Assembly (NCBI RefSeq): GCF_032444005.1
Contig: NC_091284.1
Coordinates: 841,216,001 to 841,280,000, forward strand
Length of the DNA: 64,000 nt
Source of the DNA: Ranitomeya imitator
Lineage: Eukaryota
Direction: 5' to 3'
How positions within the stretch are numbered: position 1 is the stretch's first letter; every line of letters begins with the position of its first letter. The notes beneath the pieces are model-generated. The model saw nothing but the letters and a program-made list of their open reading frames with translations, was not told where the DNA came from and made no database searches. This document shows, in pieces, positions 28,279-64,000 of this stretch. The position numbers and the translations under genes are program-made.

Positions 28279-28299
28279 TGGTGGCAAGGCGGTGGGATC
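28279..28299 (+). promoter_or_regulatory. Primer-binding site of element B, complementary to the tRNA-Leu 3' end
   Basis: TGGTGGCA(AG)GCGGTGGGAT versus the reverse complement of vertebrate tRNA-Leu 3' end, TGGTGGCAGCGGTGGGAT; 2-nt insertion. Confidence 0.75.
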
Positions 28300-28310
28300 T
28301 TAGAGCATTA

Positions 28311-29013: not shown

Positions 29014-29196
29014 TTAGTGATTTGGTTTGAGCAATCACTCTTCTCACAAAAAACTTGCAAAGTTCTTGCGAGGACTCTGCGCAAATAAATTTGGAGAACG
29101 AACTCAGTGTTTATTAGTCCTGAGACAATTGTGTGTACTGGTAATTATCCCCTCCCTTTCTCTTTGTTTTTCTGTCCTATCTTTTATTTGGCAACC

Positions 29197-30679
29197 ATGG
29201 TTGTGCTGGGAGAAACCTTTTATAAGCAGCAGACCAAAGACACCCTTATTGCCTTATGCAGGTCACAGCACATTGACTTTGCTGGCAAAAACAAAGCCCA
29301 ACTGGTCTCAGACCTGGTGCAATGGGAAGCCGCCCTAGACCAAGCCAGGCCACAGAGCCCAGTGGCCGCAGAAGCCAGCACAAGCGAACATGGTGCTGCA
29401 GCAGAGGTCCAACCATTAAATGCCGGCTCTATTAGCATTTAGCGAATTGGACCCCCACCTGCTGGCGGTCTTGAAACTACTCCCCGCCGATGACCGTGAT
29501 GGACGTCGGTAGCTGATCCAGCAACACCAGGAGAGAGCCGAGCGGCAAGCGGAGCGGGAGTACCAGCTGCAGTTAGCTCGACTGCAAATGCAGGGGTCGT
29601 CCCAGTCCAGCCGTGAGCCCAGCAGTGCTCAGACACCGAAGCCCCGGCCTGAGCACTTTCCTGTGATGGAAAAGGATGGGGACTTGGACACTTTTCTGTG
29701 GGCCTTTGAGAAAGCCTGCAGACAGTACGGGCTGCCTGGGGACCAATGGGCACGATACCTGACCCCTGGGCTGAGAGGCAAAGCTCTGGAGGCGTTTGCT
29801 GCCCTCCCTCAAGAACAAGATGGAGACTATGAGGCCATCAAGCAGGCTCTGATAGCCAAGTACCAGCTTACACCCGAGGTGTACCGTAGAAAGTTCCAGA
29901 CCCTCCAACGTGGCCCACACGACAGCTACGGCAATGTGGTGCATGGACTGAGGACCCACTTTATCCAGTGGATCCAAGGACTGTCAGTGACCACCTTTGA
30001 GCAGCTGGGATACCTGATGATCAAAGACCAGTTCTTTCATCTTTGCCCAGCTGGGGTGCGACAGTTCGTGATGGACAGAGAACCCAAAGATGTGACGAAA
30101 TCAGCGCAGATTGCCGATGCCTATGAGGCCAACCGTAGATCGGAAGTGCGGAAACCAGTCACCACCAGCTGGAGAGGGGGTAAGCCTGCAACCAACGCCA
30201 GTACCCCTGCCAGCCAACATACCAGAGGTCCTGTCTCCGCGGCCAACAGCACCAGACCTACCAATGAACCTCGCCAGTGTTTCCACTGCAAGCAGACTGG
30301 TCATATCAGTCCCTACTGTCCAGACAAGCCGAAGAACCCCCCAGCCAAGGCCCCAGGGCCTAATGCAGCAGTTCTTTTAGTGGGTGGTGTGGTTGGGAGG
30401 GTGTGTGACAACGTACAGCACGTCACTGTGGGAGGCCATGTTGCTACAGGCCTCAAGGACATCGGGGCTGAATGAACACTCATCCGACCCGAACTGGCGG
30501 CCCCTGAAGAAATCATTCCGGGGGAAACCCTAACTGTCACTGGGATTGGGGGCATCAGCTGTCCCTTACCGATGGCCCGGGTTTTTATTGATTGGGGTGC
30601 TGGGAGCGGGGTGAAGGAAGTGGGGCTGTTTGATAATTTGCCCACTGATGTTTTGTTGGGGACTGATTTGGGGAGGATG
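29197..30679 (+). pseudogene. Element B gag (SCAN domain, CCHC knuckle) and protease; broken
   Basis: SCAN-like TPEVYRRKF...W...DQFFHLCP..VRQFV...P...A..ADAY; CFHCKQTGHISPYC; degenerate protease motif DIGAE followed by a stop. Confidence 0.9.
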
Positions 30680-33600
30680 TGTTAGGAGTCGAGTTTCCTC
30701 TGCTGCACAGGGGGAATCTCGATCCGTCTCCGCTGCGGTCTCCCATTCCCCTCCAGCCGCAGTGGAGTCTGCTCAGCAGGGACGTCGATCCCAGCGTCTC
30801 GCTCAGTCTGACTCTGTGAGAAGAGTTATTGCTGCTTCTCCAGCTTCTGCCTTTGAAGCCTATTCTGGTCAGCAGCGAGCGGACTTCTCTGGGACTAAGT
30901 CCTTATCTGCACACACTGAGCATGCCCAGGGCAAGATCTCCCGTTGGAGATCGAGGGTCATGTGCTCAGGCTCTGCGGCACATTCCATTGGTCCTCTTGG
31001 CAGGTCCTAGAAGGGCAAAAGTTCTATAGCCATTTCCTGTGCTGCAGCTATATAAACTGTGCATGACCGCACGGCCATGCGCTAGTATTGTCTTACAATT
31101 GATATGTGTGTATGTGTGAGTGCAAGTCGTTCTTGGTTACCCCTTCCCTATTGAATGTCTGTTCGCGGAAGGTGTACGGCTGCTATCTAGCGCCCGACTT
31201 AGCTTACTACACTAAACACACATCACAGCGTCTTGTAGCTGTGCCTGCCAGTACGGCGCCGTGCGCCTGCCTTGCGCTTTCCATACCCAAGTCTGGGTGG
31301 TTAGTGGCGTCCGTTAGTGCGGCATCGCTCGCGCACTTGTGCGCTTATATTTCTGAAGGTTCTCTACACACCCAGTTGCGGTGTTGTGCCAGCAAGGGCC
31401 TAATCGGGCTTCAATCCCTTCTGGGGTTAAGTCCGCTGGCCACTTGCTCGCACTCTAGTGCGGTATTGCGGTCCTGTGAATTAACAGGATCGCTTTCCTC
31501 ACGCTGGGTGAGGTTTAACCCACGCGTGTTTACTTTAGTGTACCGCTATATAGTCTGCAAATTGCTAGCAGCAGGTTCTCACCTGCACGGTGGACCCCGG
31601 ACTGCGAACGCATCTTTGTCACCTGTCTTGGTGCGTTCCGCCAGTCCTAACATAATACTAGCGCCAGGGTCTGGCTAGTAAATGGCAGACGGTCAGCGTC
31701 TACAGCAGTACATCCAGCAGCTGGAGGGTAGGTTGGCGGCTCTCGAGCGCACAACCTCAGCTGTGGACGTTACTGCTGTCGCTGTTCAGGCTGCAAGTGC
31801 AGCTGCAGCCAGTTTGTCCGCTGCTACCCCTGCTCCGACCTTATCCCGTCTCCCGCTTCCAGACAAGTTTGCTGGTGACAGTAAGCCATGTCGGGGATTC
31901 GTGAGCCAGTGCTCCATACATCTCGAGCTGCTGGCTGCACGTTTTCCTACGGAACGGGCGAAAGTGGGATTCATTATATCTCTCTTGTCGGGCAGGGCGT
32001 TGGAGTGGGCAACGCCGCTTTGGGAACGTGGTGATCGTGTGGTGCAGAGTGCTCCTATCTTCCTGGACGCTCTGAGGCAGGTCTTTCTGGGACCTCGTGT
32101 CACCCACGATACCGCGCTCCAATTGTTGGCAATTACTTAGGCTTCGTCCATGGTCAGCCAGTTTGCCATCCTATTCCGGACTCTAGCTTCTGAGCTGGAA
32201 TGGCCGGATAAAGTCCTTATTCCGGTGTTCTGGAAAGGACTGGCAGATCATGTGAAGGACGCCTTGGCCACCAGGGAGATTCCCGCCACACTGGAGGAGC
32301 TTATTACTATAGCTACCCGCATCGATCTCCGTTTTAACGAGCGGAGGTTGGAGCGGACCCAGTGTAGGCAGAGGTTTCGGCTGGCTCCCATCTTTGCCAA
32401 ACCTCTAGAATCTCCTGTTATGGCGTCCGACTCCCATGAGGCCATGGAGGTTTCTCGAGCGGGATCTAGGTCTCAGACCGCTCGAGTACCTGTGCTATGT
32501 AAAAATTGCCAGCAACCGGGACATTTCGCTAATAAATGTCCACGGCGGTCGGGAAAACGATCGCGTCTAGTGTCCATTGGAGGAGGTTCACTGGACACCG
32601 CGGCATTTTCCTCAAAATTGTCCTTTAAAGGGACAATCCTGTTAGGCACATCCACTCTTACAGTAGAGCTTTGTGTGGATTCAGGAGCAGAGGGAAATTT
32701 TATGTCTTCTGCTTTTGCTCAGCGCCACGCAATACCTCTGGCTATGCTAGCCAAACCAGTAACCGTGAGAGTGGTGAATGGGTCGACACTTCCATTACAG
32801 ATCACACATCAGACTGTCCCTTTCACGTTAGCCATGTCCCCATCCCACCAGGAGACTATTTCCCTTCTTGTCCTTCCCGAGGGAATGGATGAGATTCTGT
32901 TGGGAATACCCTGGCTTCGTTTCCACTCCCCACATATTGAGTGGACCTCTGGGAGGATATTGGGTTGGAGTGAATCCTGCAAGGGCAGATGTGTGAAAGA
33001 GTGCGTTCAGGTTTCCACCACTGAGATACCCGCAGATCTCTCTACTCTCCCCAAACACTATTGGTCTTATGCAGACGTCTTTTCCAAAAAAGCCGCGGAG
33101 ACCCTTCCGCCTCACCGTCCCTATGACTGTCCTATAGATCTCTTGCCTGGAGCAGAACCTCCTCGGGGACGTGTCTATCCCCTCTCTCTCCCGGAAACGG
33201 AGGCTATGTCCCAATACATCCAGGAGAATTTGGCAAGAGGATTTATTAGGAAGTCAGTGTCACCAGCTGGGGCAGGGTTCTTCTTCATACAGAAGAAGAA
33301 TGGAGAGTTGCGTCCTTGCATAGACTACAGGGGTCTTAACGCCATCACCGTTAAAAATAAGTACCCGCTGCCCCTGATTTCTGAGCTTTTTGATAGGCTA
33401 CGGGGAGCTAAGGTATTTACCAAATTAGACCTGCGGGGAGCTTATAACCTGATTCGCATTCGTGAGGGGGACGAATGGAAGACGGCGTTTAACACCAGAG
33501 ATGGGCATTATGAGTATCTGGTGATGCCCTTCGGGCTCTGTAATGCCCCAGCCGTTTTCCAAGACTTTGTCAACGACATCTTCCGGGATATGCTTTCCAC

Positions 33601-36600: not shown

Positions 36601-36798
36601 CTAGTGCGGTATTGCGGTCCTGTGAATTAACAGGATCGCTTTCCTCACGCTGGGTGAGGTTTAACCCACGCGTGTTTACTTTAGTGTACCGCTATATAGT
36701 CTGCAAATTGCTAGCAGCAGGTTCTCACCTGCACGGTGGACCCCGGACTGCGAACGCATCTTTGTCACCTGTCTTGGTGCGTTCCGCCAGTCCTAACA
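30680..36798 (+). mobile_element. Young chromovirus (Tf1/sushi-type Gypsy) 'C' nested in B
   Basis: LTRs at 30680-31652 and 35824-36798, with no difference seen apart from a 2-nt insertion near the start. 5-bp TSD GGATG. Purine tract before the 3' LTR. Confidence 0.97.
31682..35965 (+). pseudogene. Element C gag-pol, single frame with one in-frame TAG at 32138-32140
   Basis: Gag (LPDKFAGD...; [14 protein letters not shown]), [34 protein letters not shown] plus D/D/E, GPF, and chromodomain [34 protein letters not shown]. ORFs 31682 and 32150 are in frame. Confidence 0.93.
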
Positions 36799-36803
36799 GG
36801 ATG

Positions 36804-39800: not shown

Positions 39801-40460
39801 TCCCCTGGTGAGGACGTACACTCTGCTGTCCATAGAGACGTTGCCATTGTAGGGTGCGGCTTTACTATTAATATTTGAAACAAGAAATAGGTGATGTCCT
39901 TCCTGGGCACTGCAGGGTACTATAGGCGCTTCGTACAGCACTACAGTAGCATGGCAAATCCCTTGACGGACCTCACCAGGCAGAAGCTACCCCACATCGT
40001 CAACTGGACCGATGGCTGTGAGGGGGCCTTCCAGGCGTTGAAAACAGCACTGTGCAATGCCCCTGTGTTGAAAGCAGTCGACAGCAGTCGACCGTTCTTG
40101 GTGCAGACCGACGCCAGCGAGTTTGGCCTTGGTGCTGTGCTCAGCCAGGTTGACTCGGAGGACCAAGAGCACCCCGTGTTATACCTGAGCCGGAAACTTT
40201 TGCCGAGGGAAGTGGCCTACTCCACCATCGAGAAGGAGTGCCTGGCCATAGTCTGGGCCCTGCAGCGCTTGCAGCCCTACTTGTACAGTCGCACCTTCAC
40301 TGTAGTGACCGACCACCACCCTCTGCGCTGGCTAAACGCCATGTGTGGAACCAACGGCAAGTTGCTACGCTGGAGCCTTGCCCTTCAGCAGTTTGACTTC
40401 ACCATTGAACACAATGGGCAGGGAGCATGGCAATGCAGATGGACTGTCCCACCAGGGTGA
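36804..40460 (+). pseudogene. Element B pol: integrase, then RT, then RNase H; frameshifted and interrupted
   Basis: IN zinc finger (AHE..LAGHLG...CRSCITC), core (AVDIVGP...TDQGTQF...NGLCERFN), WEGPY, then RT (FCVDYRGLN...YLDDIAIF), then RH (QTDASEFGLGAVL). Confidence 0.93.
39621..39880. mobile_element. Penelope-like pLTR fragment with an inverted 5' segment and a hammerhead-like motif
   Basis: 10-bp TSD CAAGAAATAG. 39638-39671 is inverted relative to 39694-39728. Minus strand reads TTGAAAA-AGGTCCACGGACC-GAAACGTT. Confidence 0.7.
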
Positions 40461-43002
40461 ACCTACTGAGGTGCGCATGGAGGCATACCGGGGGGTTCTG
40501 CCTCCGTAGCGCACACCAAAAGGGGGAGGTGTCATGATATTGTATGAAATATCATATAAGTTTAGTTTCTCTTGTTAGCCCAGGCTGTGGGCTAAAACCC
40601 CCTTCCCTTTCACTCAGGCAAGAGCTTGCCTTGTCAATTTATGTGGGGGAGTTATATTGAAGAAAGGTATTTACGACTGGCATAGCTGCAGTTGTACCAG
40701 CTGAAACTGGTCGGAATCCCCCTTTGAAAAACCTGAGGGTCTTTGTTCTAATATGATAAGATATTGGGCCAACAACTTGGGCTAGGAGAATATTGAATAC
40801 ATATTGTTAACATCCATCGGCGGATCTGTCAGCCGCTGTAAACATGAGCTTCTAACTCCATCAGGTAAAAAGTAGGGATTTCTCTGTAATTATGCATCAC
40901 AAATAGGACATATTTGATCTCATTAGAATGCCAATGTTAATACGAGATGAATGCTGGGTTTGATATGACTATGACATGTTCTGTAGCGGAGTTACAGGCA
41001 TTAGACAAATTTAGGTTAAATTTAGATTAAGCTGAAGAGATAGGAGGGTCTGGGAAAACCAGCTCTTTTTGTGATGTCATCAGGTTGAGCTATAAGTCTG
41101 CCAGGCACCCAAGCCTGCGGCTGTCTGTCTGCTGGAGCCTATGTGAGTCTGACTTGAAGAGCTGTTCCTAACCAGAGTCCTGATGCACTGGGACAGATGG
41201 AAACTCCACCACTAGCCTGGTTGACTCACATGATCTGAACACATGTAAGTGTTATTTCTCATTTAACCCCTGTTATTTTTATAATTTCCTTGTACATATT
41301 TTCAATTGTCTCATATTGTAACATCTTTATATAACTGTTTATAAACACTGCCTTAAACCTTTTATGGAGTATAATATTTAGTATACTAGATCCGTTCTTC
41401 CTGTTCTAAAACGTACCCTAAGTCTTCTGAAGGGAATTACGCTACTGTTTTGGGTTAGCTTCGGACCCGTTTAAACGAAGCTGGTGGCAGCATATCATGT
41501 GCGGGCGGGTGTGGGTGTCATTGTAGCGACTGCGGCGTTGATAATTATTGTTCCTGCCTGAGTGGGAGTAGTCAAATCGCAGCGTGCCCAATAGCCAGTA
41601 CATAGCAGGCAGCCTTTCTGGTGACTCATTACCCTAGGTGCAGTACCTAATCTGACCTGAGAGTAAGAGGGGCGCCAGAGAGCTGCAAGTTTCAAGTGGA
41701 ACTGTAAGTGGGATATACATAAATCCCTGCAGTTCGTGGTATATTGAAGAGCAGTGGGATACCTAAAATAAGCCCCTGTAGTAAACTATAGGTCAATAAC
41801 ATTGTGTGTTTTTTCATCACATTGTGGAGTGGAGGGATAACTAAGATAAGCCCCCCTGCACATGTGATAGTCGTCTGTTGGCCTAAAGTCACCCCGATCT
41901 GTGACGTGGGGGTGACGGTCACGGTGGAATCGTGACATGTCCTCTGAAGTGAATTACGCTACTATTCTGGGTTGGCTCTGAACCCGTTAATAATTACGAA
42001 ATCGGAGCTGGTGGCAGTGGATTTGTCCTGTGCGTTTGGGAGGCTTTGTTGCGACTGGCGGCATTGATAATTATTGTTCCCGCCTGAATGGGAGTAGTTA
42101 TATCGCCCTCGCTGCAGGGTGCCCATTAGCCAGTACATAGCAGGCAGCCTTTCTGGCAACTAATTACCCTAGGTGCAGTACCCTGTCTGACCTGAGGGTA
42201 AGGGGGTGCCAGAGAGCTGCAAGTTCTAAACCGGAACTGGGAAGTGGGATATAGATAAATCCCCTTCAGAAAGAACCAGGGGCAACCAAACAACCCCGGT
42301 TCATGACGAATTGGTGTGAGGGGTGGGGATGATAGCGGTATCCTCCCCGGGATCCCTGACATATTGGGATTCGTGACACTGGCCAGGATTTGAGAGGAGA
42401 CTGCAGAGAAGCATACGTGTCCCCCTTTATCGCGGACATATATTGGGGCTGTTAATGCCGCAGCGCACAGCTTTATATACCGTATATGTTTTATATACAG
42501 AATTGGCTTCTTATGTCCCAGCTTTTTGTCGCCATGTTCTAGTGCTCTGGAGCCCAATCTCGGCTCTGCATGGACTCAGCACCGGACACCAGCGGCGTCT
42601 GCAGAATCCCGCACTGGTCGTTTCATCTGCGACTTTCTACAACGCGATCTAATTACAGCTGTGAATGCTCCTGACCATCGCTGCTGCCCGTCACCTCCAT
42701 CCTGGCCTGTGCTGCCGACGTCCATGTGACTCACAACGTGCTGCCGAGGCCTCCGGCACAGCTGGGTCATTTTCTCTGTAGATTCATTATGTTGTGACCA
42801 CAATAACAGTCATTGGAAACTTCTCAGCCATCCTGTCATGTGACCACAGTCGCCCTGAACTGTCACCTGAATAGCGACGGTTAGCTGCCGTGCATTGTGG
42901 GTGATGCTGGCTGTGCGGGACATCAGTACAAATGTCAGACGTGACCTACTTTACATTATGGCGGAAAAGACTAATGAAACACAACTCACTGCCGCTATGA
43001 TT

Positions 43003-43351
43003 ACGTGACTTCTCCAGGTATATGATGACACCAGTAGTGATCCGGTGTGGTGCGGGCACGTGAGTCTCCAGGTATATGATAACATCAGTAGTGATCCGGA
43101 GTGGTGCGGTCACGTCAGTCTCCAGGTGTATGATGACACCAGTAGTGATCCGGTGTGGTGCGGTCACGTGAGTCTCCAGGTGTATGATGACACCAGTAGT
43201 GATCCGGTGTGGTGCGGTCACGTGAGTCTCCAGGTATATGATGACACCAGTAGTGATCCGGTGTTGTGCGGTCACGTGAGTCTCCAGGTATATGATGACA
43301 CTAGTAGTGATCTGGTGTGGTGCGGTCACGTGAGTCTCCAGGTATATGATG
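43003..43351. repeat. 54-bp CpG-rich satellite, left part
   Basis: Unit CCAGGTATATGATGACACCAGTAGTGATCCGGTGTGGTGCGGTCACGTGAGTCT; continues at 57031. Confidence 0.95.
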
Positions 43352-45151
43352 TGTTATGGACCTGGTGGTTAGGAGCACCCGGAACGACCTGATGGTTAAA
43401 CTCTCACAGGACAAGCTCTGGGAAGTGGGAACTCTGCTGACCGCAACCCCTAATCCTATCACACAACTAGAAATAGCCGTGGAGCGTACCTAACTCGGCC
43501 TAGACGCCTCTTCACAGCCTAAGAGCTAACTAGCCCTAGAAATTAGTGTTGAGCATTCCGATACCGCAAGTATCGGGTATCGGCCGATACTTGCGGTATC
43601 GGAATTCCGATACCGAGATCCGATACTTTTGTGGTATCGGGTATCGGTATCAGATACATAGAGATGTGTAAAATAAAGAATTAAAATAAAAAATATTGAT
43701 ATATTTACCTCTCCGGCGGCCCCTGGACTCAGCGTGGGTAACCGGCAGGCTTCGTTGTTCAAAATCAGCGCTTTTAGGACCTGAGAATCACGTCCCGGCT
43801 TCTGATTGGTCGCGGGCCGCCCATGTGACCGCCACGCGACCAATCACAAGCCGCGACGTCACCGCAAGCTATTAGCGCGCTCATTTTTGAAAAATGAGCG
43901 CGTTAATGACTTTCAAAGACGTAGCGGCTTGTGATTGGTCGCGGCCACGCGACCAATCACAAGCCGCGACGTCACCGCAAGCTATTAACGCGCTCATTTT
44001 TAAAAATGAGCGCGTTAATGGCTTTCAAAGACGTAGCGGCTTGTGATTGGTCGCGTGGCCGCGACCAATCACAAGCCGCGACGTCACCGCAAGCTATTAA
44101 CGCGCTCATTTTTAAAAATGAGCGCGTTAATGGCTTTCAAAGACGTAGCGGCTTGTGATTGGTCGCGTGGCCGCGACCAATCACAAGCCGCGACGTCACC
44201 GCAAGCTATTAACGCGCTCATTTTTAAAAATGAGCGCGTTAATGGCTTTCAAAGACGTAGCTGCTTGTGATTGGTCGCGTGGCCGCGACCAATCACAAGC
44301 CGCGACGTCACCGCAAGCTATTAACGCGCTCATTTTTAAAAATGAGCGCGTTAATGACTTTCAAAGACGTAGCTGTTGTGAATTCTGTGGCTGAATTCAC
44401 TCCTGTGGTCACAAGTGGTACTGCAGCTTCTGAGCTTCCTCCCTCAGGTGTTCTGGTGAGCTCGTTAACTGCTTCATTACTTAACTCCGCCTGATGCTGC
44501 TATCCTTGCTCCTTGTCAATGTTTCAGTGTTGGATCTGAGCTTCTCCTGATTGTTCCTGTGACCTGCTGCTCTGTATAGCTAAGTGCTTTTTGCTTTTTT
44601 GTTGCTTTTTTTCTGTCCAGCTTGTCTTTTGTTTTGCTGGAAGCTCTGAGACGCAAAGGGTGTACCGCCGTGCCGTTAGTTCGGCACGGTGGGTTTTTTT
44701 TTGCCCCCTTTGCGTGGTTTTGCTTTAGGGTTTTTTGTAGACTGCAAAGTTCGCTTTACTGTCCTCGCTCTGTCCTAGAATATCGGGCCCCACTTTGCTG
44801 AATCTATTTCATCCCTACGTTTGTCTTTTCATCTTACTCACAGTCATTATATGTGGGGGGCTGCCTTTTCCTTTGGGGAATTTCTCTGGGGCAAGTCAGG
44901 CCTATTTTTCTATCTTCAGGCTAGCTAGTTTCTTAGGCTGTGCCGAGTTGCCTAGGTAGTTGTTAGGCGCAATCCACAGCCGCTTTTAGTTGTGTTTAGG
45001 ATAGGATCAGGTGTGCAGTCTACAGAGTTTCCACGTCTCAGAGCTCGTTCTTGTATTTTTGGGTATTTGTCAGATCACTGTGTGCGCTCTGATCGCTAAG
45101 CACACTGTGTTTCTGGATTGCCTTCATAACACCTGTCATTAGCAAACATAA

Positions 45152-45869
45152 AGGCCCCTTCACATTAAGCGACGCTGCAGCGATACTGACAATGATCCGG
45201 ATCGTTGCAGCGTCGCTGTTTGGTCACTGGAGAGCTGTCACACAGACCGCTCTCCAACGACCAACGATGCCGGTAACCAGGGTAAACATCGGGTAACTAA
45301 GCGCAGGGCCGCGCTTAGTAACCCGATGTTTACCCTGGTTACCATCCTAAAAGTAAAAAAAAACAAACACTAGATACTTACCTACAGCCGTCTGTCCTCC
45401 AGCGCTGTGCTCTGCACTCCTCCTGTACTGTCTGGGAGCCGGAAAGCAGAGCGGTGACATCACCGCTCTGCTTTCCGGCTCACAGCCAGTACAGGAGGAG
45501 TGCAGAGCACAGCGCTGGAGGACAGACAGCGGTAGGTAAGTATCTAGTGTTTGTTTTTTTTTACTTTTAGCATGGTAACCAGGGTAAACATCGGGTTACT
45601 AAGCGCGGCCCTGCGCTTAGTTACCCGATGTTTACCCTGGTTACCAGTGAAGACATCGCTGGATCGGTGTCACACACGCCGATCCAGCGATGTCTCCAGG
45701 GAGTCCAGCGACGAAATAAAGTTCTGGACTTTATTCAGCGACCAACGATCTCCCAGCAGGGGCCTGATCGTTGGTCGCTGTCACACATAACGATTTCATT
45801 AACGATATCGTTGCTACGTCACAAATAGCAACGATATCGTTAACAATATCGTTATGTGTGAAGGTACCT
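45152..45869. mobile_element. Harbinger-type MITE (same family as 28311-29013) at the extreme end of the 5' LTR of E
   Basis: TAA TSD, with TIRs AGGCCCCTTCACA / TGTGAAGGTACCT. It is absent from the 3' LTR (CATAACA). Confidence 0.92.
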
Positions 45870-46012
45870 TAACAGTACAAGGAGCCAACTAATGATTCTC
45901 AATAGAGGGAAAGAAAAAGTTCTGACATCATTTTTTTTTTTTTTTTCTGCTCTGTGTTCACTTTTTTTTTTTTCCCCTAGACATTTGGGTGATTCTGGAC
46001 ACAGGTGTGGAC

Positions 46013-49000
46013 ATGGATATTCAGGGTCTGTGCTCTTCAATGGATAATCTCGTTATAAATGTACAAAAAATTCAAGATACTATTGATCAGAAATCTATGT
46101 TAGAACCAAGAATTCCTATTCCTGATTTGTTTTTTGGAGATAGAACTAAGTTTCTAAGTTTCAAAAATAATTGTAAGCTATTTCTGGCCTTGAAACCTCA
46201 TTCTTCTGGTAATCCTATTCAACAGGTTTTGATTATTATTTCTTTTTTGCGCGGCGACCCTCAAGACTGGGCATTTTCTCTTGCGCCAGGAGACCCTGCA
46301 TTGAGTAGTGTCGATGCGTTTTTCCTGGCGCTCGGATTGCTGTACGATGAGCCTAATTCAGTGGATCAGGCTGAGAAAAATTTGCTGGCTTTGTGCCAGG
46401 GTCAGGATGATATAGAAGTATATTGTCAGAAATTTAGGAAATGGTCAGTACTCACTCAGTGGAATGAATCTGCGCTGGCAGCTTTGTTCAGAAAGGGTCT
46501 CTCTGAGGCTCTTAAGGATGTCATGGTGGGATTTCCTATGCCTGCTGGTTTGAATGAGTCTTTGTCTTTGGCCATTCAGATCGGTCGACGCTTGCGCGAG
46601 CGTAAATCTGTGCACCATTTGGCGGTACTGCCTGAGGTTAAACCTGAGCCTATACAGTGCGATAGGACTATGACTAGAGTTGAACGGCAGGAATACAGAC
46701 GTCTGAATGGTCTGTGTTTCTACTGTGGTGATTCCACTCATGCTATTTCTGATTGTCCTAAGCGCACTAAGCGGTCCGCTAGGTCTGCCGTTATTGGTAC
46801 TGTACAGTCCAAATTCCTTCTGTCCATTACCTTGATATGCTCTTTGTCGTCGTTTTCTGTCATGGCGTTTGTGGATTCGGGCGCTGCCCTGAATCTGATG
46901 GATTTGGATTATGCTAAACGTTGTGGGTTTTTCTTGGAGCCTTTGCGGTGTCCTATTCCATTGAGAGGAATTGATGCTACACCTTTGGCCAAGAATAAAC
47001 CTCAGTACTGGACCCAACTGACCATGTGCATGGCTCCTGCACATCAGGAAGTTATTCGCTTTCTGGTGTTGCATAATCTGCATGATGTGGTCGTGTTGGG
47101 GTTGCCATGGCTACAAACCCATAATCCAGTATTGGATTGGAATTCCATGTCGGTATCCAGCTGGGGTTGTCAGGGAGTACATGGTGATGTTCCATTTTTG
47201 TCGATTTCGTCATCCACCCCTTCTGAGGTCCCAGAGTTCTTGTCTGATTATCAGGATGTATTTGAAGAGCCCAAGTCCGATGCTCTACCTCCGCATAGGG
47301 ATTGTGATTGTGCTATCAATTTGATTCCTGGTAGTAAATTCCCTAAAGGTCGATTATTTAATTTATCCGTGCCCGAACACGCCGCTATGCGCAGTTATGT
47401 GAAGGAATCCCTGGAGAAGGGACATATTCGCCCATCGTCATCACCACTGGGAGCAGGGTTCTTTTTTGTAGCCAAGAAGGATGGTTCGCTAAGACCGTGT
47501 ATTGATTACCGCCTTCTTAATAAGATCACTGTTAAATTTCAGTATCCCTTGCCATTGTTATCTGACTTGTTTGCTCGGATTAAGGGGGCTAGTTGGTTTA
47601 CTAAGATTGATCTTCGTGGTGCGTATAATCTGGTGAGAATCAGGCAGGGAGATGAATGGAAAACGGCATTCAATACGCCCGAGGGTCATTTTGAGTATCT
47701 AGTGATGCCGTTCGGACTTGCCAATGCTCCATCTGTGTTTCAGTCTTTTATGCATGACATCTTCCGTGAGTATCTGGATAAATTCCTGATTGTTTACTTG
47801 GATGACATTTTGATCTTCTCAGATGATTGGGAGTCTCATGTGAAGCAGGTCAGAATGGTTTTTCAGGTCCTGCGTGCTAACTCTTTGTTTGTGAAGGGAT
47901 CAAAGTGTCTCTTCGGTGTGCAGAAAGTTTCATTTTTGGGGTTCATCTTTACCCCTTCTACTATCGAGATGGATCCAGCTAAGGTCCAAGCCATCCAGGA
48001 TTGGATTCAGCCGACATCTCTGAAAAGTCTGCAAAAGTTCCTGGGCTTTGCTAATTTTTATCGTCGCTTCATCTGTAATTTTTCTAGCATTGCCAAACCA
48101 TTGACCGATTTGACCAAGAAGGGTGCTGATTTGGTTAATTGGTCTTCTGCTGCTGTGGAAGCTTTTCAGGAGTTGAAGCGTCGTTTTTGTTCTGCCCCTG
48201 TGTTGTGTCAGCCAGATGTTTCTCTTCCGTTCCAGGTCGAGGTTGATGCTTCTGAGATTGGAGCAGGGGCGGTTTTGTCACAGAGAGGTTCTGATTGCTC
48301 AGTGATGAAAGCATGTGCTTTCTTTTCCAGGAAGTTTTCGCCCGCTGAGCGTAATTATGATGTGGGCAATCGAGAGTTGCTGGCCATGAAGTGGGCATTC
48401 GAGGAGTGGCGTCATTGGCTTGAAGGAGCTAAGCATCGCGTGGTGGTATTGACTGATCATAAGAACTTGACTTATCTCGAGTCTGCCAAGCGCTTGAATC
48501 CTAGACAGGCCCGTTGGTCGTTATTTTTTGCCCGCTTCGACTTTGTGATTTCGTACCTTCCGGGCTCTAAAAATGTGAAGGCGGATGCTCTGTCTAGGAG
48601 TTTTGTGCCCGACTCTCCGGGTTTATCTGAGCCAGCGGGTATCCTCAAGGAAGGAGTCATTGTGTCTGCCATCTCCCCTGATTTGCGGCGGGTGCTGCAA
48701 AAATTTCAGGCGAATAAACCTGATCGTTGTCCAGCAGAGAAACTGTTCGTCCCTGATAGGTGGACTAATAAACTTATCTCTGAACTTCATTGTTCGGTGT
48801 TGGCTGGTCATCCTGGAATCTTTGGTACCAGAGAGTTAGTGGCTAGATCCTTCTGGTGGCCATCTCTGTCACGGGATGTACGTACTTTTGTGCAGTCCTG
48901 TGGGATTTGTGCTAGGGCTAAGCCCTGCTGTTCTCGTGCCAGTGGGTTGCTTTTGCCCTTGCCAGTCCCAAAGAGGCCTTGGACACATATTTCGATGGAT

Positions 49001-50080
49001 TTCATTTCTGACCTTCCCGTTTCTCAAAAGATGTCAGTCATTTGGGTGGTCTGTGATCGCTTTTCTAAAATGGTCCATCTGGTGCCCTTGGCTAAATTGC
49101 CTTCCTCCTCTGATTTGGTACCTTTGTTCTTTCAGCATGTGGTTCGGTTGCATGGCATTCCTGAGAATATTGTTTCTGACAGAGGTTCCCAGTTTGTTTC
49201 AAGGTTTTGGCGAGCCTTTTGTGGTAGGATGGGCATTGACCTATCCTTTTCCTCGGCTTTCCATCCTCAGACTAATGGCCAGACCGAACGAACCAATCAG
49301 ACCTTGGAAACATATCTGAGATGTTTTGTTTCTGCAGACCAGGATGATTGGGTGTCCTTTTTGCCGTTGGCTGAGTTCGCCCTTAATAATCGGGCCAGCT
49401 CGGCTACCTTGGTTTCTCCATTTTTTTGCAATTCTGGGTTCCATCCTCGTTTCTCTTCAGGACAGGTTGAGTCTTCGGACTGTCCTGGTGTGGATTCTGT
49501 GGTGGATAGGTTGCAGCAGATCTGGACTCAGGTAGTGGACAATTTGATCTTGTCCCAGGAGAAAGCTCAACTTTTCGCTAATCGCAGACGCCGTGTGGGT
49601 CCCCGACTTCGTGTTGGGGATCTGGTTTGGTTATCTTCTCGTCATATTCCTATGAAGGTTTCCTCTCCTAAATTTAAACCTCGTTTTATTGCTCCGTATA
49701 GGATTTCTGAGGTTCTCAATCCTGTGTCTTTTCGTTTGACCCTCCCAGACTCCTTTTCCATACATAATGTATTCCATAGGTCGTTGTTGCGGAGATACGT
49801 GGCACCTATGGTTCCATCTGTTGAGCCTCCTGCCCCGGTTTTGGTGGAGGGGGAATTGGAGTATATTGTGGAGAAGATTTTGGATTCTCGTGTTTCTAGA
49901 CGGAAACTCCAGTATCTGGTTAAATGGAAGGGTTATGCTCAGGAAGATAATTTCTGGGTTTTTGCCTCTGATGTTCATGCTTCCGATCTTGTTCGTGCCT
50001 TTCATGCGGCTCATCCTGGTCGGCCTGGGGGCTCTGGTGAGGGTTCGGTGACCCCTCCTCAAGGGGGGGTACTGTTGTGA
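46013..50080 (+). CDS. Element E Gag-PR-RT-RH-IN-chromodomain polyprotein, uninterrupted (1363-aa ORF from GTG 45989; first ATG 46013)
   Basis: [65 protein letters not shown] and chromodomain YIVEKILDSR..LQYLVKWKGY. The stop TGA lies in the first 8 nt of the 3' LTR. Confidence 0.96.
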   Translation: MDIQGLCSSMDNLVINVQKIQDTIDQKSMLEPRIPIPDLFFGDRTKFLSFKNNCKLFLALKPHSSGNPIQQVLIIISFLRGDPQDWAFSLAPGDPALSSVDAFFLALGLLYDEPNSVDQAEKNLLALCQGQDDIEVYCQKFRKWSVLTQWNESALAALFRKGLSEALKDVMVGFPMPAGLNESLSLAIQIGRRLRERKSVHHLAVLPEVKPEPIQCDRTMTRVERQEYRRLNGLCFYCGDSTHAISDCPKRTKRSARSAVIGTVQSKFLLSITLICSLSSFSVMAFVDSGAALNLMDLDYAKRCGFFLEPLRCPIPLRGIDATPLAKNKPQYWTQLTMCMAPAHQEVIRFLVLHNLHDVVVLGLPWLQTHNPVLDWNSMSVSSWGCQGVHGDVPFLSISSSTPSEVPEFLSDYQDVFEEPKSDALPPHRDCDCAINLIPGSKFPKGRLFNLSVPEHAAMRSYVKESLEKGHIRPSSSPLGAGFFFVAKKDGSLRPCIDYRLLNKITVKFQYPLPLLSDLFARIKGASWFTKIDLRGAYNLVRIRQGDEWKTAFNTPEGHFEYLVMPFGLANAPSVFQSFMHDIFREYLDKFLIVYLDDILIFSDDWESHVKQVRMVFQVLRANSLFVKGSKCLFGVQKVSFLGFIFTPSTIEMDPAKVQAIQDWIQPTSLKSLQKFLGFANFYRRFICNFSSIAKPLTDLTKKGADLVNWSSAAVEAFQELKRRFCSAPVLCQPDVSLPFQVEVDASEIGAGAVLSQRGSDCSVMKACAFFSRKFSPAERNYDVGNRELLAMKWAFEEWRHWLEGAKHRVVVLTDHKNLTYLESAKRLNPRQARWSLFFARFDFVISYLPGSKNVKADALSRSFVPDSPGLSEPAGILKEGVIVSAISPDLRRVLQKFQANKPDRCPAEKLFVPDRWTNKLISELHCSVLAGHPGIFGTRELVARSFWWPSLSRDVRTFVQSCGICARAKPCCSRASGLLLPLPVPKRPWTHISMDFISDLPVSQKMSVIWVVCDRFSKMVHLVPLAKLPSSSDLVPLFFQHVVRLHGIPENIVSDRGSQFVSRFWRAFCGRMGIDLSFSSAFHPQTNGQTERTNQTLETYLRCFVSADQDDWVSFLPLAEFALNNRASSATLVSPFFCNSGFHPRFSSGQVESSDCPGVDSVVDRLQQIWTQVVDNLILSQEKAQLFANRRRRVGPRLRVGDLVWLSSRHIPMKVSSPKFKPRFIAPYRISEVLNPVSFRLTLPDSFSIHNVFHRSLLRRYVAPMVPSVEPPAPVLVEGELEYIVEKILDSRVSRRKLQYLVKWKGYAQEDNFWVFASDVHASDLVRAFHAAHPGRPGGSGEGSVTPPQGGVLL

Positions 50081-52057
50081 ATTCTGTGGCTGAATTCACT
50101 CCTGTGGTCACAAGTGGTACTGCAGCTTCTGAGCTTCCTCCCTCAGGTGTTCTGGTGAGCTCGTTAACTGCTTCATTACTTAACTCCGCCTGATGCTGCT
50201 ATCCTTGCTCCTTGTCAATGTTTCAGTGTTGGATCTGAGCTTCTCCTGATTGTTCCTGTGACCTGCTGCTCTGTATAGCTAAGTGCTTTTTGCTTTTTTG
50301 TTGCTTTTTTTCTGTCCAGCTTGTCTTTTGTTTTGCTGGAAGCTCTGAGACGCAAAGGGTGTACCGCCGTGCCGTTAGTTCGGCACGGTGGGTTTTTTTT
50401 TGCCCCCTTTGCGTGGTTTTGCTTTAGGGTTTTTTGTAGACTGCAAAGTTCGCTTTACTGTCCTCGCTCTGTCCTAGAATATCGGGCCCCACTTTGCTGA
50501 ATCTATTTCATCCCTACGTTTGTCTTTTCATCTTACTCACAGTCATTATATGTGGGGGGCTGCCTTTTCCTTTGGGGAATTTCTCTGGGGCAAGTCAGGC
50601 CTATTTTTCTATCTTCAGGCTAGCTAGTTTCTTAGGCTGTGCCGAGTTGCCTAGGTAGTTGTTAGGCGCAATCCACAGCCGCTTTTAGTTGTGTTTAGGA
50701 TAGGATCAGGTGTGCAGTCTACAGAGTTTCCACGTCTCAGAGCTCGTTCTTGTATTTTTGGGTATTTGTCAGATCACTGTGTGCGCTCTGATTGCTAAGC
50801 ACACTGTGTTTCTGGATTGCCTTCATAACACCTGTCATTAGCAAACATAACACGTAACGGCTTGTGATTGGTCGCGTGGCCGCGACCAATCACAAGCCGC
50901 TACGTCTTTGAAAGTCATTAACGCGCTCATTTTTAAAAATGAGCGCGTTAATAGCTTGCGGTGACGTCGCGGCCACGCGACCAATCACAAGCCGCTACGT
51001 CTTTGAAAGCCATTAACGCGCTCATTTTTAAAAATGAGCGCGTTAATAGCTTGCGGTGACGTCGCGGCTTGTGATTGGTCGCGTGGCGGTCACATGGGCG
51101 GCCCGCGACCAATCAGAAGCCGGGACGTGATTCTCAGGTCCTAAAAGCGCTGATTTTGAACAAAGAAGCCTGCCGGTTACCCGCGCTGAGTTCAGGGGCC
51201 GCCGGAGAGGTAAATATATCAATATTTTTTATTTTAATTCTTTATTTTACACATCCCTATGGATCCCAGGGCCTGAAGGAGAGTTTCCTCTCCTTCAGAC
51301 CCTGGGAACCATGAGAATACCTTCCGATACTTGATGTCCCATTGACTTGTATTGGTATCGGATATCGGTATCGGCAATATCCGATATTTTTCGGGTATCG
51401 GCCGATACTATCCGATACCGATACTTTCAAGTATCGGACGGTATGGCTCAACACTACTAGAAATAGAAAATAAAGCCTACCTTGCCAAAGAGAAATTCCC
51501 CAAAGGAAAAGGCAGTCCCCCACATATATTGACTGTGAGTAAAGATGAAGTCACAAACACAGAAATGAAACAGGTTTCAGCAAAGGGAGGCCAGACTTAC
51601 TAAACAGACTGAGGATAGGAAAGGTATCTTTGCGGTCAGCACAAAAAACTACAAAAGACCACGCAGAGTGTGCAAAAAGACCTCCGCACCGACTCACGGT
51701 GCGGAGGTGCCACTCTGCATCCCAGAGCTTCCAGCTAGCAAGACAAAATCATAATAGCAAGCTGGACAAGAAAACAATGAACAAATAATTAACTAGCAGG
51801 GACTTAGCTTCTGCTGGAGTAGACAGGTCAGCAGAAAGATCCAAGAGCGAACTGAACCAGTACAAGAACATTGACAGCTGGCATGGAGTAACGATCTGAG
51901 TGGTGTTAAATAGAGCAGCCAGCCAACAAATAAACTCCGTCACCTGTGGAAGGAACCTCAGAAGCAGCAGCTCCACGCACAGCCACCAGAGGGAGTCCAT
52001 GGACAGAACTCGCCGAAGTACCATTCATGACCACAGGAGGGAGTTCGATAACAGAAT

Positions 52058-56100: not shown

Positions 56101-57030
56101 ATCTACACCTGTGTCCTGAACCACCCAGAGGTTAAGGGGAAAAGAAAGACAAAACACACTGCAGAGAAAAAAAAATGGTCTCAGAACTTCTCTTATCCCT
56201 CTATTGAGATGCATTAATACTTTGGGCCAGCTGTACTGTTATGGACCTGGTGGTTAGGAGCACCCGGAACGACCTGATGGTTAAACTCTCACAGGACAAG
56301 CTCTGGGAAGTGGGAGCTCTGCTGACCGCAATCCCTAATCCTATCACCCACACTAGAAATAGCCGTGGAGCACTCCTGATGGTCCCTAGGTGCCTTGTCA
56401 CAGCCTAAGAGCTAGCTAGCCCTAGAGATAGAAAATAAAGCCTACCTTGCCTCAGAGAAATTCCCCAAAGGAAAAGACAGCCCCCCACATATATTGACTG
56501 TGAGTAAAGATGAAGTCACAAACACAGAAATGAAACAGGTTTCTGCAAAGGGAGACCCGACTTACTAAACAGACTGAGGATAGGAAAGGTATCTTTGCGG
56601 TCAGCACAAAAAACTACAAAAGACCACGCAGAGTGTGCAAAAAGACCTCCGCACCGACTCACGGTGCGGAGGTGCCACTCTGCATCCCAGAGCTTCCAGC
56701 TAGCAAGACAAAATCATAATAGCAAGCTGGACAAGAAAACAATGAACAAATAATTAACTAGCAGGGACTTAGCTTCTGCTGGAGTAGACAGGTCACCAGA
56801 AAGATCCAAGAGCGAACTGAACCAGTACAAGAACATTGACAGCTGGCATGGAGTAACGATCTGAGTGGAGTTAAATAGAGCAGCCAGCCAACGAATAAAC
56901 TCCGTCACCTGTGGAAGGAACCTCAGAAGCAGCAGCTCCACTCACAGCCACCAGAGGGAGTCCATGGACAGAACTCGCCGAAGTACCATTCATGACCACA
57001 GGAGGGAGTTCGATAACAGAATTCACAACA

Positions 57031-58410: not shown

Positions 58411-58630
58411 TGATAATAGGCAGGCAGAGATGCTGCGGAGCTGACGCTCATTAGCTGTAGTTACGGCTGGTTAGGTCCTCACGTCTGGGCTCAGGTGTGA
58501 TCTCCCCGGGGGGATCTGTCTCAGCTCCGTTACTAAGGTTTAGTGTCACCTGTGCCTCCGGCAGCGACTGACGTGCAGAAAGCACACATCACAGGGATAG
58601 TAATGGTGGCCGGACCCTCTAGCTGCCGCC

Positions 58631-62191: not shown

Positions 62192-64000
62192 TGTTGTGAA
62201 TTCTGTTATCGAACTCCCTCCTGTGGTCATGAATGGTACTTCGGCGAGTTCTGTCCATGGACTCCCTCTGGTGGCTGTGAGTGGAGCTGCTGCTCCTGAG
62301 GTTCCTTCCACAGGTGACTTAGTTTATTCTTTGGCTGGCTGCTCTATTTAACTCCACTCAGATCGTTACTCCATGCCAGCTGTCAATGTTCTTGTACTGG
62401 TTCAGTTCGCTCTTGGATCTTTCTGGTGACCTGTCTACTCCAGCAGAAGCTAAGTCCCTGCTAGTTAATTATTTGTTCATTGTTTTCTTGTCCAGCTTGC
62501 TATAATGATTTTGCCTTGCTAGCTGGAAGCTCTGGGATGCAGAGTGGCACCTCCGCACCGTGAGTCGGTGCGGAGGTCTTTTTGCACACTCTGCGTGGTC
62601 TTTTTGTAGTTTTTTGTGCTGACCGCAAAGATACCTTTCCTATCCTCAGTCTGTTTAGTAAGTCTGTCCTCCTTTGCTGAAACCTGTTTCATTTCTGTGT
62701 TTGTGACTTTCATCTTAACTCACAGTCAATATATGTGGGGGGTTGCCTTTTTCTTTGGGGAATTTCTCTGAGGCAAGGTAGGCTTTATTTTCTATCTCTA
62801 GGACTAGTTAGCTCTTAGGCTGTGAAGAGGTGTCTAGGCAGAGTTAGGTACGCTCCACGGCTATTTCTAGTGTGTGTGATAGGATTAGGGGTTGCGGTCA
62901 GCAGAGCTCCCACTTCCCAGAGCTTGTCCTTTGTTAGTTTAACCATCAGGTCATTTCGGGTGCTCCTAACCACCAGGTCCATAACAGTACAGCTGGCCCA
63001 AAGTGTTAATGCATCTCAATAGAGGGATAAGAGAAGTTCTGAGACCATTTTTTTTTCTCTGCAGTGTGTTTTGTCTTTCTTTTCCCCTAAACCTCTGGGT
63101 GGTTCAGGACACAGGTGTAGCTATGGACATTCAAGGTCTGTCCTCTTGTGTGGATCATCTCTCACTGCAAGGGTACAAAACATTCAAGATTTTGTGGTTC
63201 AGAATCCGATGTTAGAGCCTAGAATTCCAATTCCTGATTTGTTTTCTGGGGATAGATCTAAGTTCCTGAATTTCAAAAATAATTGTAAACTGTTTCTTGC
63301 TTTGAAACCCCGTTCCTCTGGTGACCCCGTTCAACAAGTAAAAATCATTATTTCTTTGTTGCGTGGCGACCCTCAAGACTGGGCATTTTCCCTTGCGCCA
63401 GGAGATCCTGCATTGCGTGATGTAGATGCATTTTTTCTGGCGCTTGGATTGCTTTATGATGAACCAAATTCAGTGGATCAGGCAGATAAAATCTTGCTGG
63501 CTTTGTGTCAGGGTCAGGATGAAGCGGAGGTATATTGTCAGAAGTTTAGAAAATGGTCTGTGCTTACTCAGTGGAATGAGTATGCCCTGGCGGCAATTTT
63601 CAGAAAGGGTCTTTCTGAAGCCCTTAAGGATGTCATGGTGGGATTTCCCACGCCTGCTGGTCTGAATGAGTCTATGTCCTTGGCCATTCAGATCGATTGG
63701 CGCTTGCGTGAGCGCAAAGCTGTGCACCATTTGGCGGTATTCTCTGAGCATAGGCCTGAGCCTATGCAATGTGATAGGACTTTGACCAGAGCTGAACGGC
63801 AAGAACACAGACGTCGGAATGGGCTGTGTTTCTACTGTGGTGATTCCACTCATGCTATCTCCGATTGTCCTAAGCGCACTAAGCGGTTCGCTAGGTCTGC
63901 CACTATTGGTATGGTACAGTCTAAATTTCTTTTGTCCATTACTCTGATTTGCTCTTTGTCATCCTATTCTGTTATGGCATTTGTGGATTCAGGCGCTGCC
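62192..64000 (+). mobile_element. Chromovirus 'F' (same family as D): 5' LTR 62192-62986 and a frameshifted gag from ATG 63123; runs off the window
   Basis: The LTR is the reverse complement of the D LTRs. Gag sequence matches D/E (EPRIPIPDLF...CFYCGDSTHAISDC...FVDSGA). Confidence 0.95.

What the first reader, a model, noticed from the sequence alone, without database searches (positions are those of the whole stretch)
44478..45885. Four compensatory substitutions between sister families preserve 5'-end/PBS pairing
Seen: E has TACTTAA at 44478, GCTCCTTGT 30 nt later (44508-16) and PBS ACAAGGAGC (45877-85). F has TATTTAA at 62345, GCCAGCTGT 30 nt later (62375-83) and PBS ACAGCTGGC (62989-97). 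D repeats this on the minus strand (56877, 56847-39, 56234-26). The 9-mers differ at 4 positions and all 4 are mirrored in the PBS. Pairing starts 2 nt (GT) past the LTR end, fitting integrase 3' processing. With C, three families share the geometry and a GC start. Inference: strong covariation support for tRNA-independent self-priming in vertebrate chromoviruses. The mechanism is established for fungal Tf1; I cannot verify how far it has been demonstrated in amphibians.
Basis: partly seen in the sequence, partly recalled or inferred. Interest (0 to 1): 0.85.

Follow-up and report, generated by a model that had tools for sequence, protein, structure and literature searches.

The report
Self-priming frog chromovirus retrotransposons
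Several gypsy-type (chromovirus) retrotransposons in this poison-frog-like genome carry, instead of a tRNA primer site, a site that pairs with the predicted first 9-11 bases of their own RNA; this is the self-priming trick first shown in fission-yeast Tf1 and already described for its vertebrate relatives, so it is a clean confirmation and not a new mechanism.

Summary
In E, F and D a TATA-like heptamer lies 30 nt upstream of a 9-mer. That 9-mer is the exact reverse complement of the 9 nt that start 2 nt (GT) after the 5' LTR. E and F/D differ at four adjacent positions of the 9-mer, and all four changes are mirrored in the PBS.

A 9-nt complement somewhere in the LTR is only marginally unlikely: p is about 0.01-0.03, and cross-family controls also reach 9. 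The position is what makes the case. Seven unrelated chromovirus families show the same layout: C, E and D/F here, plus four fetched from other assemblies. Each has T at -30/-31, a primer starting with G, and a PBS 1-2 nt after the LTR's ACA. All 63 of 63 positions pair, against a mean of 33 when primers and PBSs are mismatched. None has a tRNA-type TGG start, while a Gmr1-like neighbour, B, does.

Tf1-type self-priming is therefore well supported in silico. The start site, the RNase H cut and the priming itself remain inferred, because only contigs and no raw RNA reads were available.

The mechanism is already described as a common feature of Tf1/sushi chromoviruses "from fungi to vertebrates" (Butler 2001; PMC6317226; PMC4600332). 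First-stage readers of this scan (unchecked notes) reported the same signature at six other places in this genome. I class it as a new member of a known kind, of modest interest.

The parts
44374..45874 (+). Element E 5' LTR (TGTTGTG...CATAACA), interrupted by a 718-nt MITE at 45152-45869
   Evidence: blastn against the 3' LTR, 99.7% over 783 nt. MITE has TSD TAA and ends AGGCCCC.../...GGTACCT. Contigs from other copies join ...AGCAAACA directly to 45870 (loose ends and table 5c).
44478..44484 (+). E TATA-like heptamer TACTTAA, T at -30 from the 9-mer
44508..44516 (+). E predicted self-primer GCTCCTTGT, taken as the first 9 nt of the transcript (start of R)
   Evidence: Exact reverse complement of 45877-85. 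9/9 pairs in the MFE of the natural 1418-nt leader, mean pair probability 0.92.
45875..45876 (+). GT spacer between the LTR's terminal CA and the PBS
   Evidence: 1 nt in the other families
45877..45885 (+). E primer-binding site ACAAGGAGC (no TGG start)
45989..50080 (+). E single gag-pol ORF, 1363 aa: gag, RT, RNase H, integrase, Tf2-1 SH3, chromodomain
50061..50069 (+). E polypurine tract AAGGGGGGG, followed by TAC and then the 3' LTR
50073..50852 (+). E 3' LTR, uninterrupted, with the 9-mer copy at 50207-15
62192..62986 (+). Element F 5' LTR; the element runs off the window end
62345..62351 (+). F TATA-like TATTTAA
62375..62383 (+). F predicted self-primer GCCAGCTGT
   Evidence: 9/9 in MFE, pair probability 0.99
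62989..62997 (+). F PBS ACAGCTGGC, 2 nt (GT) after the LTR
56237..57030 (-). Element D 5' LTR, same family as F (95-97% identity)
56839..56847 (-). D predicted self-primer GCCAGCTGT; TATTTAA at 56877-71
56226..56234 (-). D PBS ACAGCTGGC
30678..31652 (+). Element C 5' LTR, a third chromovirus family; 3' LTR at 35824-36798, 99.8% identical
31049..31056 (+). C canonical TATA box TATATAAA, T at -30
31079..31089 (+). C predicted self-primer GCGCTAGTATT
31654..31664 (+). C PBS AATACTAGCGC, 1 nt after the LTR's ACA

Best explanation
E, D/F and C are chromovirus (Ty3/gypsy, Tf1/sushi or V-clade type) LTR retrotransposons that start reverse transcription by Tf1-type self-priming.

Proposed sequence of events:
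1. RNA polymerase II starts about 30 nt downstream of a TATA-like box in the 5' LTR, at a G that follows a T.
2. The first 9 nt of the RNA (11 in C) fold back over about 610-650 nt of R-U5 and pair with the site 1-2 nt past the LTR's terminal CA.
3. The element's RNase H cuts just after the paired stretch, freeing a 3'-OH.
4. Reverse transcriptase extends it through the GT spacer, U5 and R to make minus-strand strong-stop DNA, which then transfers to the 3' R.
5. The 1-2 spacer bases are the bases beyond CA that integrase trims.
6. The primer is later copied to regenerate the PBS, so a change at the RNA's 5' end is carried into the PBS. That explains why sister families E and D/F differ at four mirrored positions without losing pairing.

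Shown by sequence: the complementarity, its fixed geometry, its covariation across families, the absence of a tRNA-type PBS, and the chromovirus protein set.

Inferred: the start site, the RNase H cut, the priming itself, and copying of the primer into the PBS.
For: - Exact complements at fixed places in E, F, D and C.
- The same layout in four further families from other assemblies, with unrelated primer sequences: L001 GCGGTTTATA, L002 GTCAGATCCTT, L003 GCCTGTTATT, L004/L005 GTTCAGTCTTG. Each has a T-A-rich heptamer at -30/-31, T at -1, G at +1, and a PBS 1 nt after ACA.
- Across seven families 63/63 positions are Watson-Crick paired, with 2-4 pair types at 8 of 9 positions. Mismatched primer/PBS pairings give a mean of 32.7 and a maximum of 40, and 0 of 20,000 reach 63.
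- The helix is in the MFE of the natural leaders of E (9/9, probability 0.92) and F and D.
- Pfam finds gag, RT, RNase H, integrase, Tf2-1 SH3 and chromodomain.
- None of the seven post-LTR sequences begins with TGG. The Gmr1-like element B in the same window has AAT-TGGTGGCAAGG....
- In contigs of three runs from two organisms the stretch 44374-44694 is read with no differences at the TATA-like box or 9-mer. About 98 variable places were found elsewhere in the 1.8 kb.
- Literature: self-priming is described as a common feature of Tf1/sushi elements, with start site, TATA box and self-primer aligned.
Against: - There is no RNA-level evidence. All public runs holding the sequence were kept as contigs, which cannot show a start site.
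- The duplex in E and D/F is only 9 bp, against 11 in Tf1 (Jia et al. preprint; PMC4600332) and 10-11 in the other families here.
- E's TACTTAA is a poor TATA box.
- A 9-nt complement somewhere in an 800-nt LTR arises in 1-3% of shuffles, and in 3 of 56 cross-family controls.
- No canonical poly(A) signal was found in E's LTR, so the extent of R is undefined.
- With a longer 3' extension the MFE drops the helix in C, L002 and L004.
- Only the central duplex of the three-duplex 'pretzel' required by Tf1 was clearly predicted.
Confidence: 0.85

Rival explanations
1. The 5' 9-mer/PBS helix is real and conserved but is a structural long-range (cyclising) helix of the leader RNA. It would serve packaging, dimerisation or translation control. 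Priming would then use something else, such as an internal cut, a host small RNA or a tRNA fragment.
For: Predicted folds extend the helix into a long imperfect R/U5 panhandle in F, D and L001. The start site is unmeasured, so the 9-mer is not shown to be the RNA's very end.
Against: The paired site sits exactly where every LTR element has its PBS, 1-2 nt after CA. No alternative PBS (TGG...) is present. The 5' partner begins at the TATA+30 position in 7 of 7 families. The group's founding member has been shown experimentally to self-prime (PMC4600332).
Confidence: 0.08
2. The PBS is complementary to a host tRNA or tRNA fragment, and the LTR complement is coincidental.
For: F's PBS region contains TGGCCC internally. 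A 9-mer complement alone is only p of about 0.01-0.03.
Against: No TGG lies at the PBS start in any of the seven families. PBS sequences are unrelated between families, yet each matches its own LTR at the same geometry. E and F PBSs differ at 4 of 9 positions, which a shared tRNA primer would not allow. No tRNA gene was found in the window, though that search is not genome-wide.
Confidence: 0.03
3. Chance complementarity with no function.
For: Off-diagonal 9-nt matches occur in the cross-family control.
Against: Seven of seven families show the same geometry. 63/63 positions pair against about 33 expected, and 0 of 20,000 mismatched pairings reach that. The substitutions between sister families are mirrored.
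Confidence: 0.01

Closest known systems
Tf1 / Tf2 of Schizosaccharomyces pombe (self-primed chromoviruses; Levin 1995, Lin & Levin 1997, as cited in PMC4600332 and bioRxiv 10.1101/2022.12.06.519325)
   Same: [quoted passage not shown] A TATA box lies upstream of the start site, which is the primer start. The integrase carries a chromodomain, and there is no tRNA PBS.
   Different: The duplex is 9 bp in E and D/F against 11 in Tf1. The intervening R-U5 loop is much longer, about 610-650 nt. The two flanking duplexes of the 'pretzel' were not clearly predicted here. The host is a frog. Nothing has been shown experimentally.
Vertebrate Tf1/sushi group or V-clade chromoviruses (sushi-ichi of Fugu; Amn-ichi, Amn-ni and Amn-san of fish and Xenopus; Butler et al. 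2001 J Mol Evol 52:260; PMC2774666; PMC4131045)
   Same: The domain set is the same (gag, PR, RT, RNase H, IN, chromodomain). The nearest protein hits are fish and frog chromovirus polyproteins at 57-67% identity. Secondary sources report predicted self-priming for the group. Amn-san-type elements are the most abundant and most transcribed LTR elements in frogs (PMC4131045).
   Different: These are dendrobatid-frog families not individually described in what I could read. E and its relatives L001 and L003 have one gag-pol ORF, whereas -1 frameshifting is said to predominate outside fission yeast. I could not read Butler 2001 to see whether amphibian LTR/PBS sequences were analysed there.
Tj1 of S. 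japonicus and Tosmo1-3 / Tcry1 (PMC4600332; bioRxiv 10.1101/2022.12.06.519325)
   Same: Self-priming is inferred from the same in-silico signature: a 5'-LTR segment complementary to the PBS, with start site and TATA box aligned to the primer.
   Different: Tj1's transposition activity was tested. No such test exists for the frog elements.

Membership tests
Tf1/sushi-group (self-priming) chromoviruses | Ty3/gypsy domain order with a chromodomain at the integrase C-terminus | tested here: met
   Pfam on the E and C ORFs finds RVT_1, RT_RNaseH, Integrase_H2C2, rve, SH3_Tf2-1 and Chromo, in that order. L003 gives the same.
Tf1/sushi-group (self-priming) chromoviruses | No tRNA-type PBS (no TGG... 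complementary to a tRNA 3' CCA end) next to the 5' LTR | tested here: met
   Post-LTR sequences of seven families lack TGG at offsets 0-5. Element B in the same window has one. No frog tRNA set was available for an exhaustive comparison.
Tf1/sushi-group (self-priming) chromoviruses | PBS complementary to a segment of the 5' LTR lying at the start of R | tested here: met
   Exact complements of 9-11 nt, 63/63 paired over seven families.
Tf1/sushi-group (self-priming) chromoviruses | That segment is the actual 5' end of the transcript | not testable with these tools
   It is predicted only from the TATA-like box at -30/-31 and T(-1)G(+1) in 7 of 7 families. The runs found are contigs only.
Tf1/sushi-group (self-priming) chromoviruses | Three-duplex 'pretzel' leader structure (central primer:PBS duplex plus two flanking duplexes) | tested here: inconclusive
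   The central duplex is in the MFE of E, F, D, L001 and L003 in both settings, and in all seven families with a 40-nt extension. An adjoining R/U5 duplex is predicted in F, D and L001. No clear third duplex appears, and MFE folds of 400-1400 nt are unreliable.
Tf1/sushi-group (self-priming) chromoviruses | Placement inside the group on an RT-IN tree with reference elements | not tested
   No reference sequences (Tf1, sushi-ichi, Amn-san) were available as tool outputs. There is only hit-list evidence: vertebrate chromovirus polyproteins at 57-67% identity, fungal and plant ones at about 41%.
Tf1/sushi-group (self-priming) chromoviruses | RNase H cleavage after the primer, and priming of minus-strand DNA from it | not testable with these tools
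   Needs biochemistry or cDNA sequencing.

The most novel reading that the evidence does not exclude
Because the PBS is recopied from the primer in every replication cycle, a change at the RNA's 5' end spreads automatically to the PBS. Co-resident sister families such as E and D/F would then acquire private primer/PBS 'addresses' quickly. That would isolate them from one another, with no cross-priming in mixed particles, and would make them immune to host defences aimed at tRNA-type PBSs. It would act as a built-in speciation mechanism for self-primed retroelements. The contiguous four-base block difference between families whose coding regions are 82-88% identical fits this idea but does not show it.
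Probability: 0.12. Interest if true: 0.55.

Novelty: new member of a known kind. Interest (0 to 1): 0.25.

Why it matters
It gives a clear, checkable sequence signature for annotating self-primed chromoviruses in frog genomes: a TATA-like box, a G-start primer 30 nt downstream, and its complement 1-2 nt after the LTR's CA. LTR finders that insist on a tRNA PBS would miss or mis-score such elements. It also offers a natural pair of sister families with different primer/PBS pairs, which could be used to study how primer and PBS co-evolve. It does not change what is known about the mechanism.

Tried and rejected
1. Start-site mapping from public RNA data failed. The look-up of sequencing runs listed no run on record as RNA and none kept as raw reads. 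Read laying on four runs returned contigs only, with no molecule starts. It did show that other copies lack the MITE and that the 9-mer region is invariant in the dominant contigs.

2. Fetching more copies from frog assemblies failed. The Dendrobates gene model spanned more than 100 kb, and the Ranitomeya and one ENA sample file were too large. A within-genome census of young copies could therefore not be done.

3. Lin & Levin 1997 (PMC1369541) is not held. Butler 2001 is not in the library. Both are cited through secondary sources only.

4. The poly(A) signal search found nothing canonical in E's LTR and only a weak AATATA in F and D, so R's 3' end is unassigned.

5. Target-site duplications of E and C are ambiguous. 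E sits in a palindromic 112-nt repeat (CGTAGC against CGTAAC). C's flanks fit AGGAT only if the LTR ends are shifted by one base.

6. MFE folding as a test is soft. The helix is in the MFE of all seven leaders with 40 nt of 3' extension, but only in E, F, D, L001 and L003 with 60 nt.

7. For two of those folds I modelled E's uninterrupted leader inside a script, taking R-U5 from its 3' LTR with the PBS from the 5' copy. I then repeated the fold on the natural, MITE-containing 5' leader and deleted the scratch file. The report relies on the natural sequence.

8. A tRNA-Leu match for B's PBS is from memory only and was not tested.

Full report
**What is in the sequence**

| Element | TATA-like box | 9-mer | Spacer | PBS |
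|---|---|---|---|---|
| E | TACTTAA 44478-84 | GCTCCTTGT 44508-16 | GT 45875-76 | ACAAGGAGC 45877-85 |
| F | TATTTAA 62345-51 | GCCAGCTGT 62375-83 | GT 62987-88 | ACAGCTGGC 62989-97 |
| D (minus strand) | TATTTAA 56877-71 | GCCAGCTGT 56847-39 | GT 56236-35 | ACAGCTGGC 56234-26 |

I fixed the LTR ends independently.
- E's LTRs are 44374-45874 and 50073-50852. They read TGTTGTG...CATAACA, are 99.7% identical over 783 nt, and the 3' LTR is preceded by the polypurine tract AAGGGGGGG plus TAC.
- D's 5' LTR is 57030-56237. Its target duplication CATCAT is visible once the split 3' LTR is reassembled.
- F's LTR is 62192-62986.

So the PBS does begin 2 nt after the LTR's terminal CA.

E's 5' LTR carries a 718-nt MITE (45152-45869, TSD TAA) between the 9-mer and the PBS. 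Contigs from other copies join the flanks directly, so the MITE is a later insertion in this copy.

**What the elements are**

E's 1363-aa ORF and C's 1271-aa ORF carry RT, RNase H, integrase zinc-binding and core domains, the Tf2-1-type SH3 and a chromodomain. E's ORF also has a gag match. C's has a CCHC zinc knuckle and an aspartyl protease match. They are chromoviruses.

The best protein hits (96-99% identity) are Ranitomeya imitator models, so the host is a dendrobatid frog or a close relative. Fish and Xenopus chromovirus polyproteins follow at 57-67%, and fungal and plant ones at about 41%.

E and D/F are sister families. Their internal regions are 82-88% identical and their LTRs about 75%. 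C is a third family.

**Is it more than chance?**

Taken alone, a 9-nt complement is weak evidence.
- With PBS offsets 0-4 and any LTR position allowed, it arises in 3.2% (E) and 0.9% (F) of shuffled LTRs. C's 11-mer arises in 0.1%.
- In a cross-family control, three of 56 wrong PBS/LTR combinations also reach 9.

Three things carry the case.

1. The E and F 9-mers and PBSs sit at homologous, gap-free positions. They differ only at positions 3-6 (TCCT against CAGC), and the PBS shows the exact mirror (AGGA against GCTG).

2. The geometry is fixed. In C a canonical TATATAAA (31049-56) has its first T 30 nt before GCGCTAGTATT (31079-89). The complement AATACTAGCGC begins 1 nt after the LTR's ACA.

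3. The layout recurs. I fetched four further chromovirus families from other assemblies through protein homologues: L001, L002, L003 (67% identical to E) and L004/L005. Each has a T-A-rich heptamer at -30/-31, a T at -1, a primer of 10-11 nt starting with G, and its exact complement 1 nt after the LTR's ACA. The primer sequences are unrelated.

Over the first nine primer positions of the seven families, 63 of 63 cells are Watson-Crick pairs. There are 2-4 pair types at eight of nine positions. Pairing each primer with another family's PBS gives a mean of 32.7 and a maximum of 40, and none of 20,000 such pairings reaches 63.

None of the seven post-LTR sequences starts with TGG. The neighbouring Gmr1-like element B does, with AAT-TGGTGGCAAGG... 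after its LTR. That provides an in-window contrast.

**Folding**

- The natural 1418-nt leader of E, MITE included, has the 9-bp helix in its minimum-free-energy structure, with mean pair probability 0.92.
- F and D also have it, at 0.99 for F.
- With 40 nt of 3' extension all seven families show it. With 60 nt, C, L002 and L004 lose it to alternative pairings.

Folding is therefore consistent with the model but not decisive.

Tf1 is reported to need a three-duplex 'pretzel' (bioRxiv 10.1101/2022.12.06.519325). Here the central duplex is clear, and an adjoining R/U5 duplex is predicted in F, D and L001. I did not see a third.

**Variation among copies**

Contigs of four runs from two organisms were laid on 44300-46100.
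- They read 44374-44694 without a single difference in two runs of two studies. A further contig over 44477-44592, from a third study, is also identical.
- The second organism's contig (44373-44863) has one other letter. The only X8-specific difference listed in that span is at 44721, outside the 9-mer.
- About 98 variable positions were found elsewhere in the 1.8 kb.
- No difference was listed at the PBS, but 58 rows were not shown and coverage just past the PBS is thin. This is supportive only.
- All runs were contigs, so no transcript start could be seen.

**Mechanism**

The best reading is Tf1-type self-priming.
1. Transcription starts at the G about 30 nt after the TATA-like box.
2. The first 9-11 nt fold back onto the PBS.
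3. RNase H cuts after the duplex.
4. RT extends through the spacer, U5 and R.
5. Integrase later trims the 1-2 spacer bases beyond CA.

From general retroviral replication, the PBS of the plus strand is copied from the primer. In a self-primed element a change at the RNA's 5' end would then be carried into the PBS. That would generate mirrored changes without separate selection events. This part is my inference. It makes the covariation if anything more diagnostic of self-priming. It also means the adjacent 'four compensatory substitutions' should not be counted as four independent events.

**Comparison with what is known**

- Neumann et al. [quoted passage not shown] 2001, Lin & Levin 1997 and Atwood-Moore 2006.
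- Guo et al. [quoted passage not shown]
- Jia et al. [quoted passage not shown] They align TATA boxes, start sites and self-primers in the same way as done here.
- Frog chromoviruses (Amn-san type) are known as the most abundant and most transcribed LTR elements in frogs (PMC4131045), though that paper does not analyse PBSs.
- I found no paper combining self-priming, primer binding site and Xenopus, and I could not read Butler 2001. An explicit amphibian LTR/PBS analysis may or may not exist.
- First-stage readers of this scan (unchecked notes) reported the same signature at six other places in this genome and for element C.

**Verdict**

Novelty is low: these are new frog members of a known self-priming group, with a tidy sister-family covariation example. 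Interest is 0.25.

Noticed in passing
43003-58440: Four-deep nesting. A 54-nt satellite (43003-43351 and 57031-58440) holds element D (minus strand, TSD CATCAT). D's 3' LTR is split (52066-51457 plus 43543-43352) by a roughly 1.4-kb hAT-like non-autonomous element X (43544-51456; TIR TAGTGTTGAGC, 8-bp TSD ATTTCTAG, internal 112-nt palindromic repeats). X holds element E, and E's 5' LTR holds a MITE.
   Followed up: partly
45152-45869 and 28306-28997: A 718-nt MITE with a long internal hairpin (arms 45272-45457 and 45460-45645, 97% complementary), TSD TAA and ends AGGCCCCTTCACA.../...TGTGAAGGTACCT. A second copy, 84% identical, lies next to element B's LTR. Depth in contigs suggests it is very abundant.
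   Followed up: partly
26500-41937: Element B (LTRs about 94% identical, more than 1.4 kb, one carrying a 365-nt insertion also found at 3328-3692) encodes a SCAN-domain gag with a zinc knuckle. Integrase comes before RT and RNase H, which is the Gmr1-like gypsy arrangement with copia-like order. Its post-LTR sequence is a tRNA-type PBS (TGGTGGCAAGGCGGTGGGATC). Element C is nested inside it.
   Followed up: partly
32138-32140: Element C has a single in-frame stop inside the gag capsid-like domain (DUF4939 / RTL1-8_LDOC match), although its LTRs are 99.8% identical.
   Followed up: partly
44663-44702 (E); 62549-62590 (F): A G+C-rich hairpin followed by a T-run lies about 150 nt into the predicted R. 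It is conserved between E and F with changed stem sequences. This is the subject of another note (s1-288234) and was not examined here.
   Followed up: no
45989-50080; L001:948-5207; L003:50-4339 against L002:5090-9348 and L004:4868-9270: E and its closest relatives have one continuous gag-pol ORF. The fish-type families have separate gag and pol ORFs, overlapping in L002 and about 110 nt apart in L004/L005. Frameshifting is said to predominate in non-yeast Tf1/sushi elements.
   Followed up: no
50061-50072; 52067-52080 (minus); L001, L002: The polypurine G-run is separated from the LTR's TGT by the same three bases, TAC, in E, D, L001 and L002 (TAA in C).
   Followed up: no
1247-23700: The first third of the window is dominated by several tandem-repeat arrays (periods 43, 8, 12/18, 17 and 39 nt) and by eight N gaps (7627-15920).
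   Followed up: no
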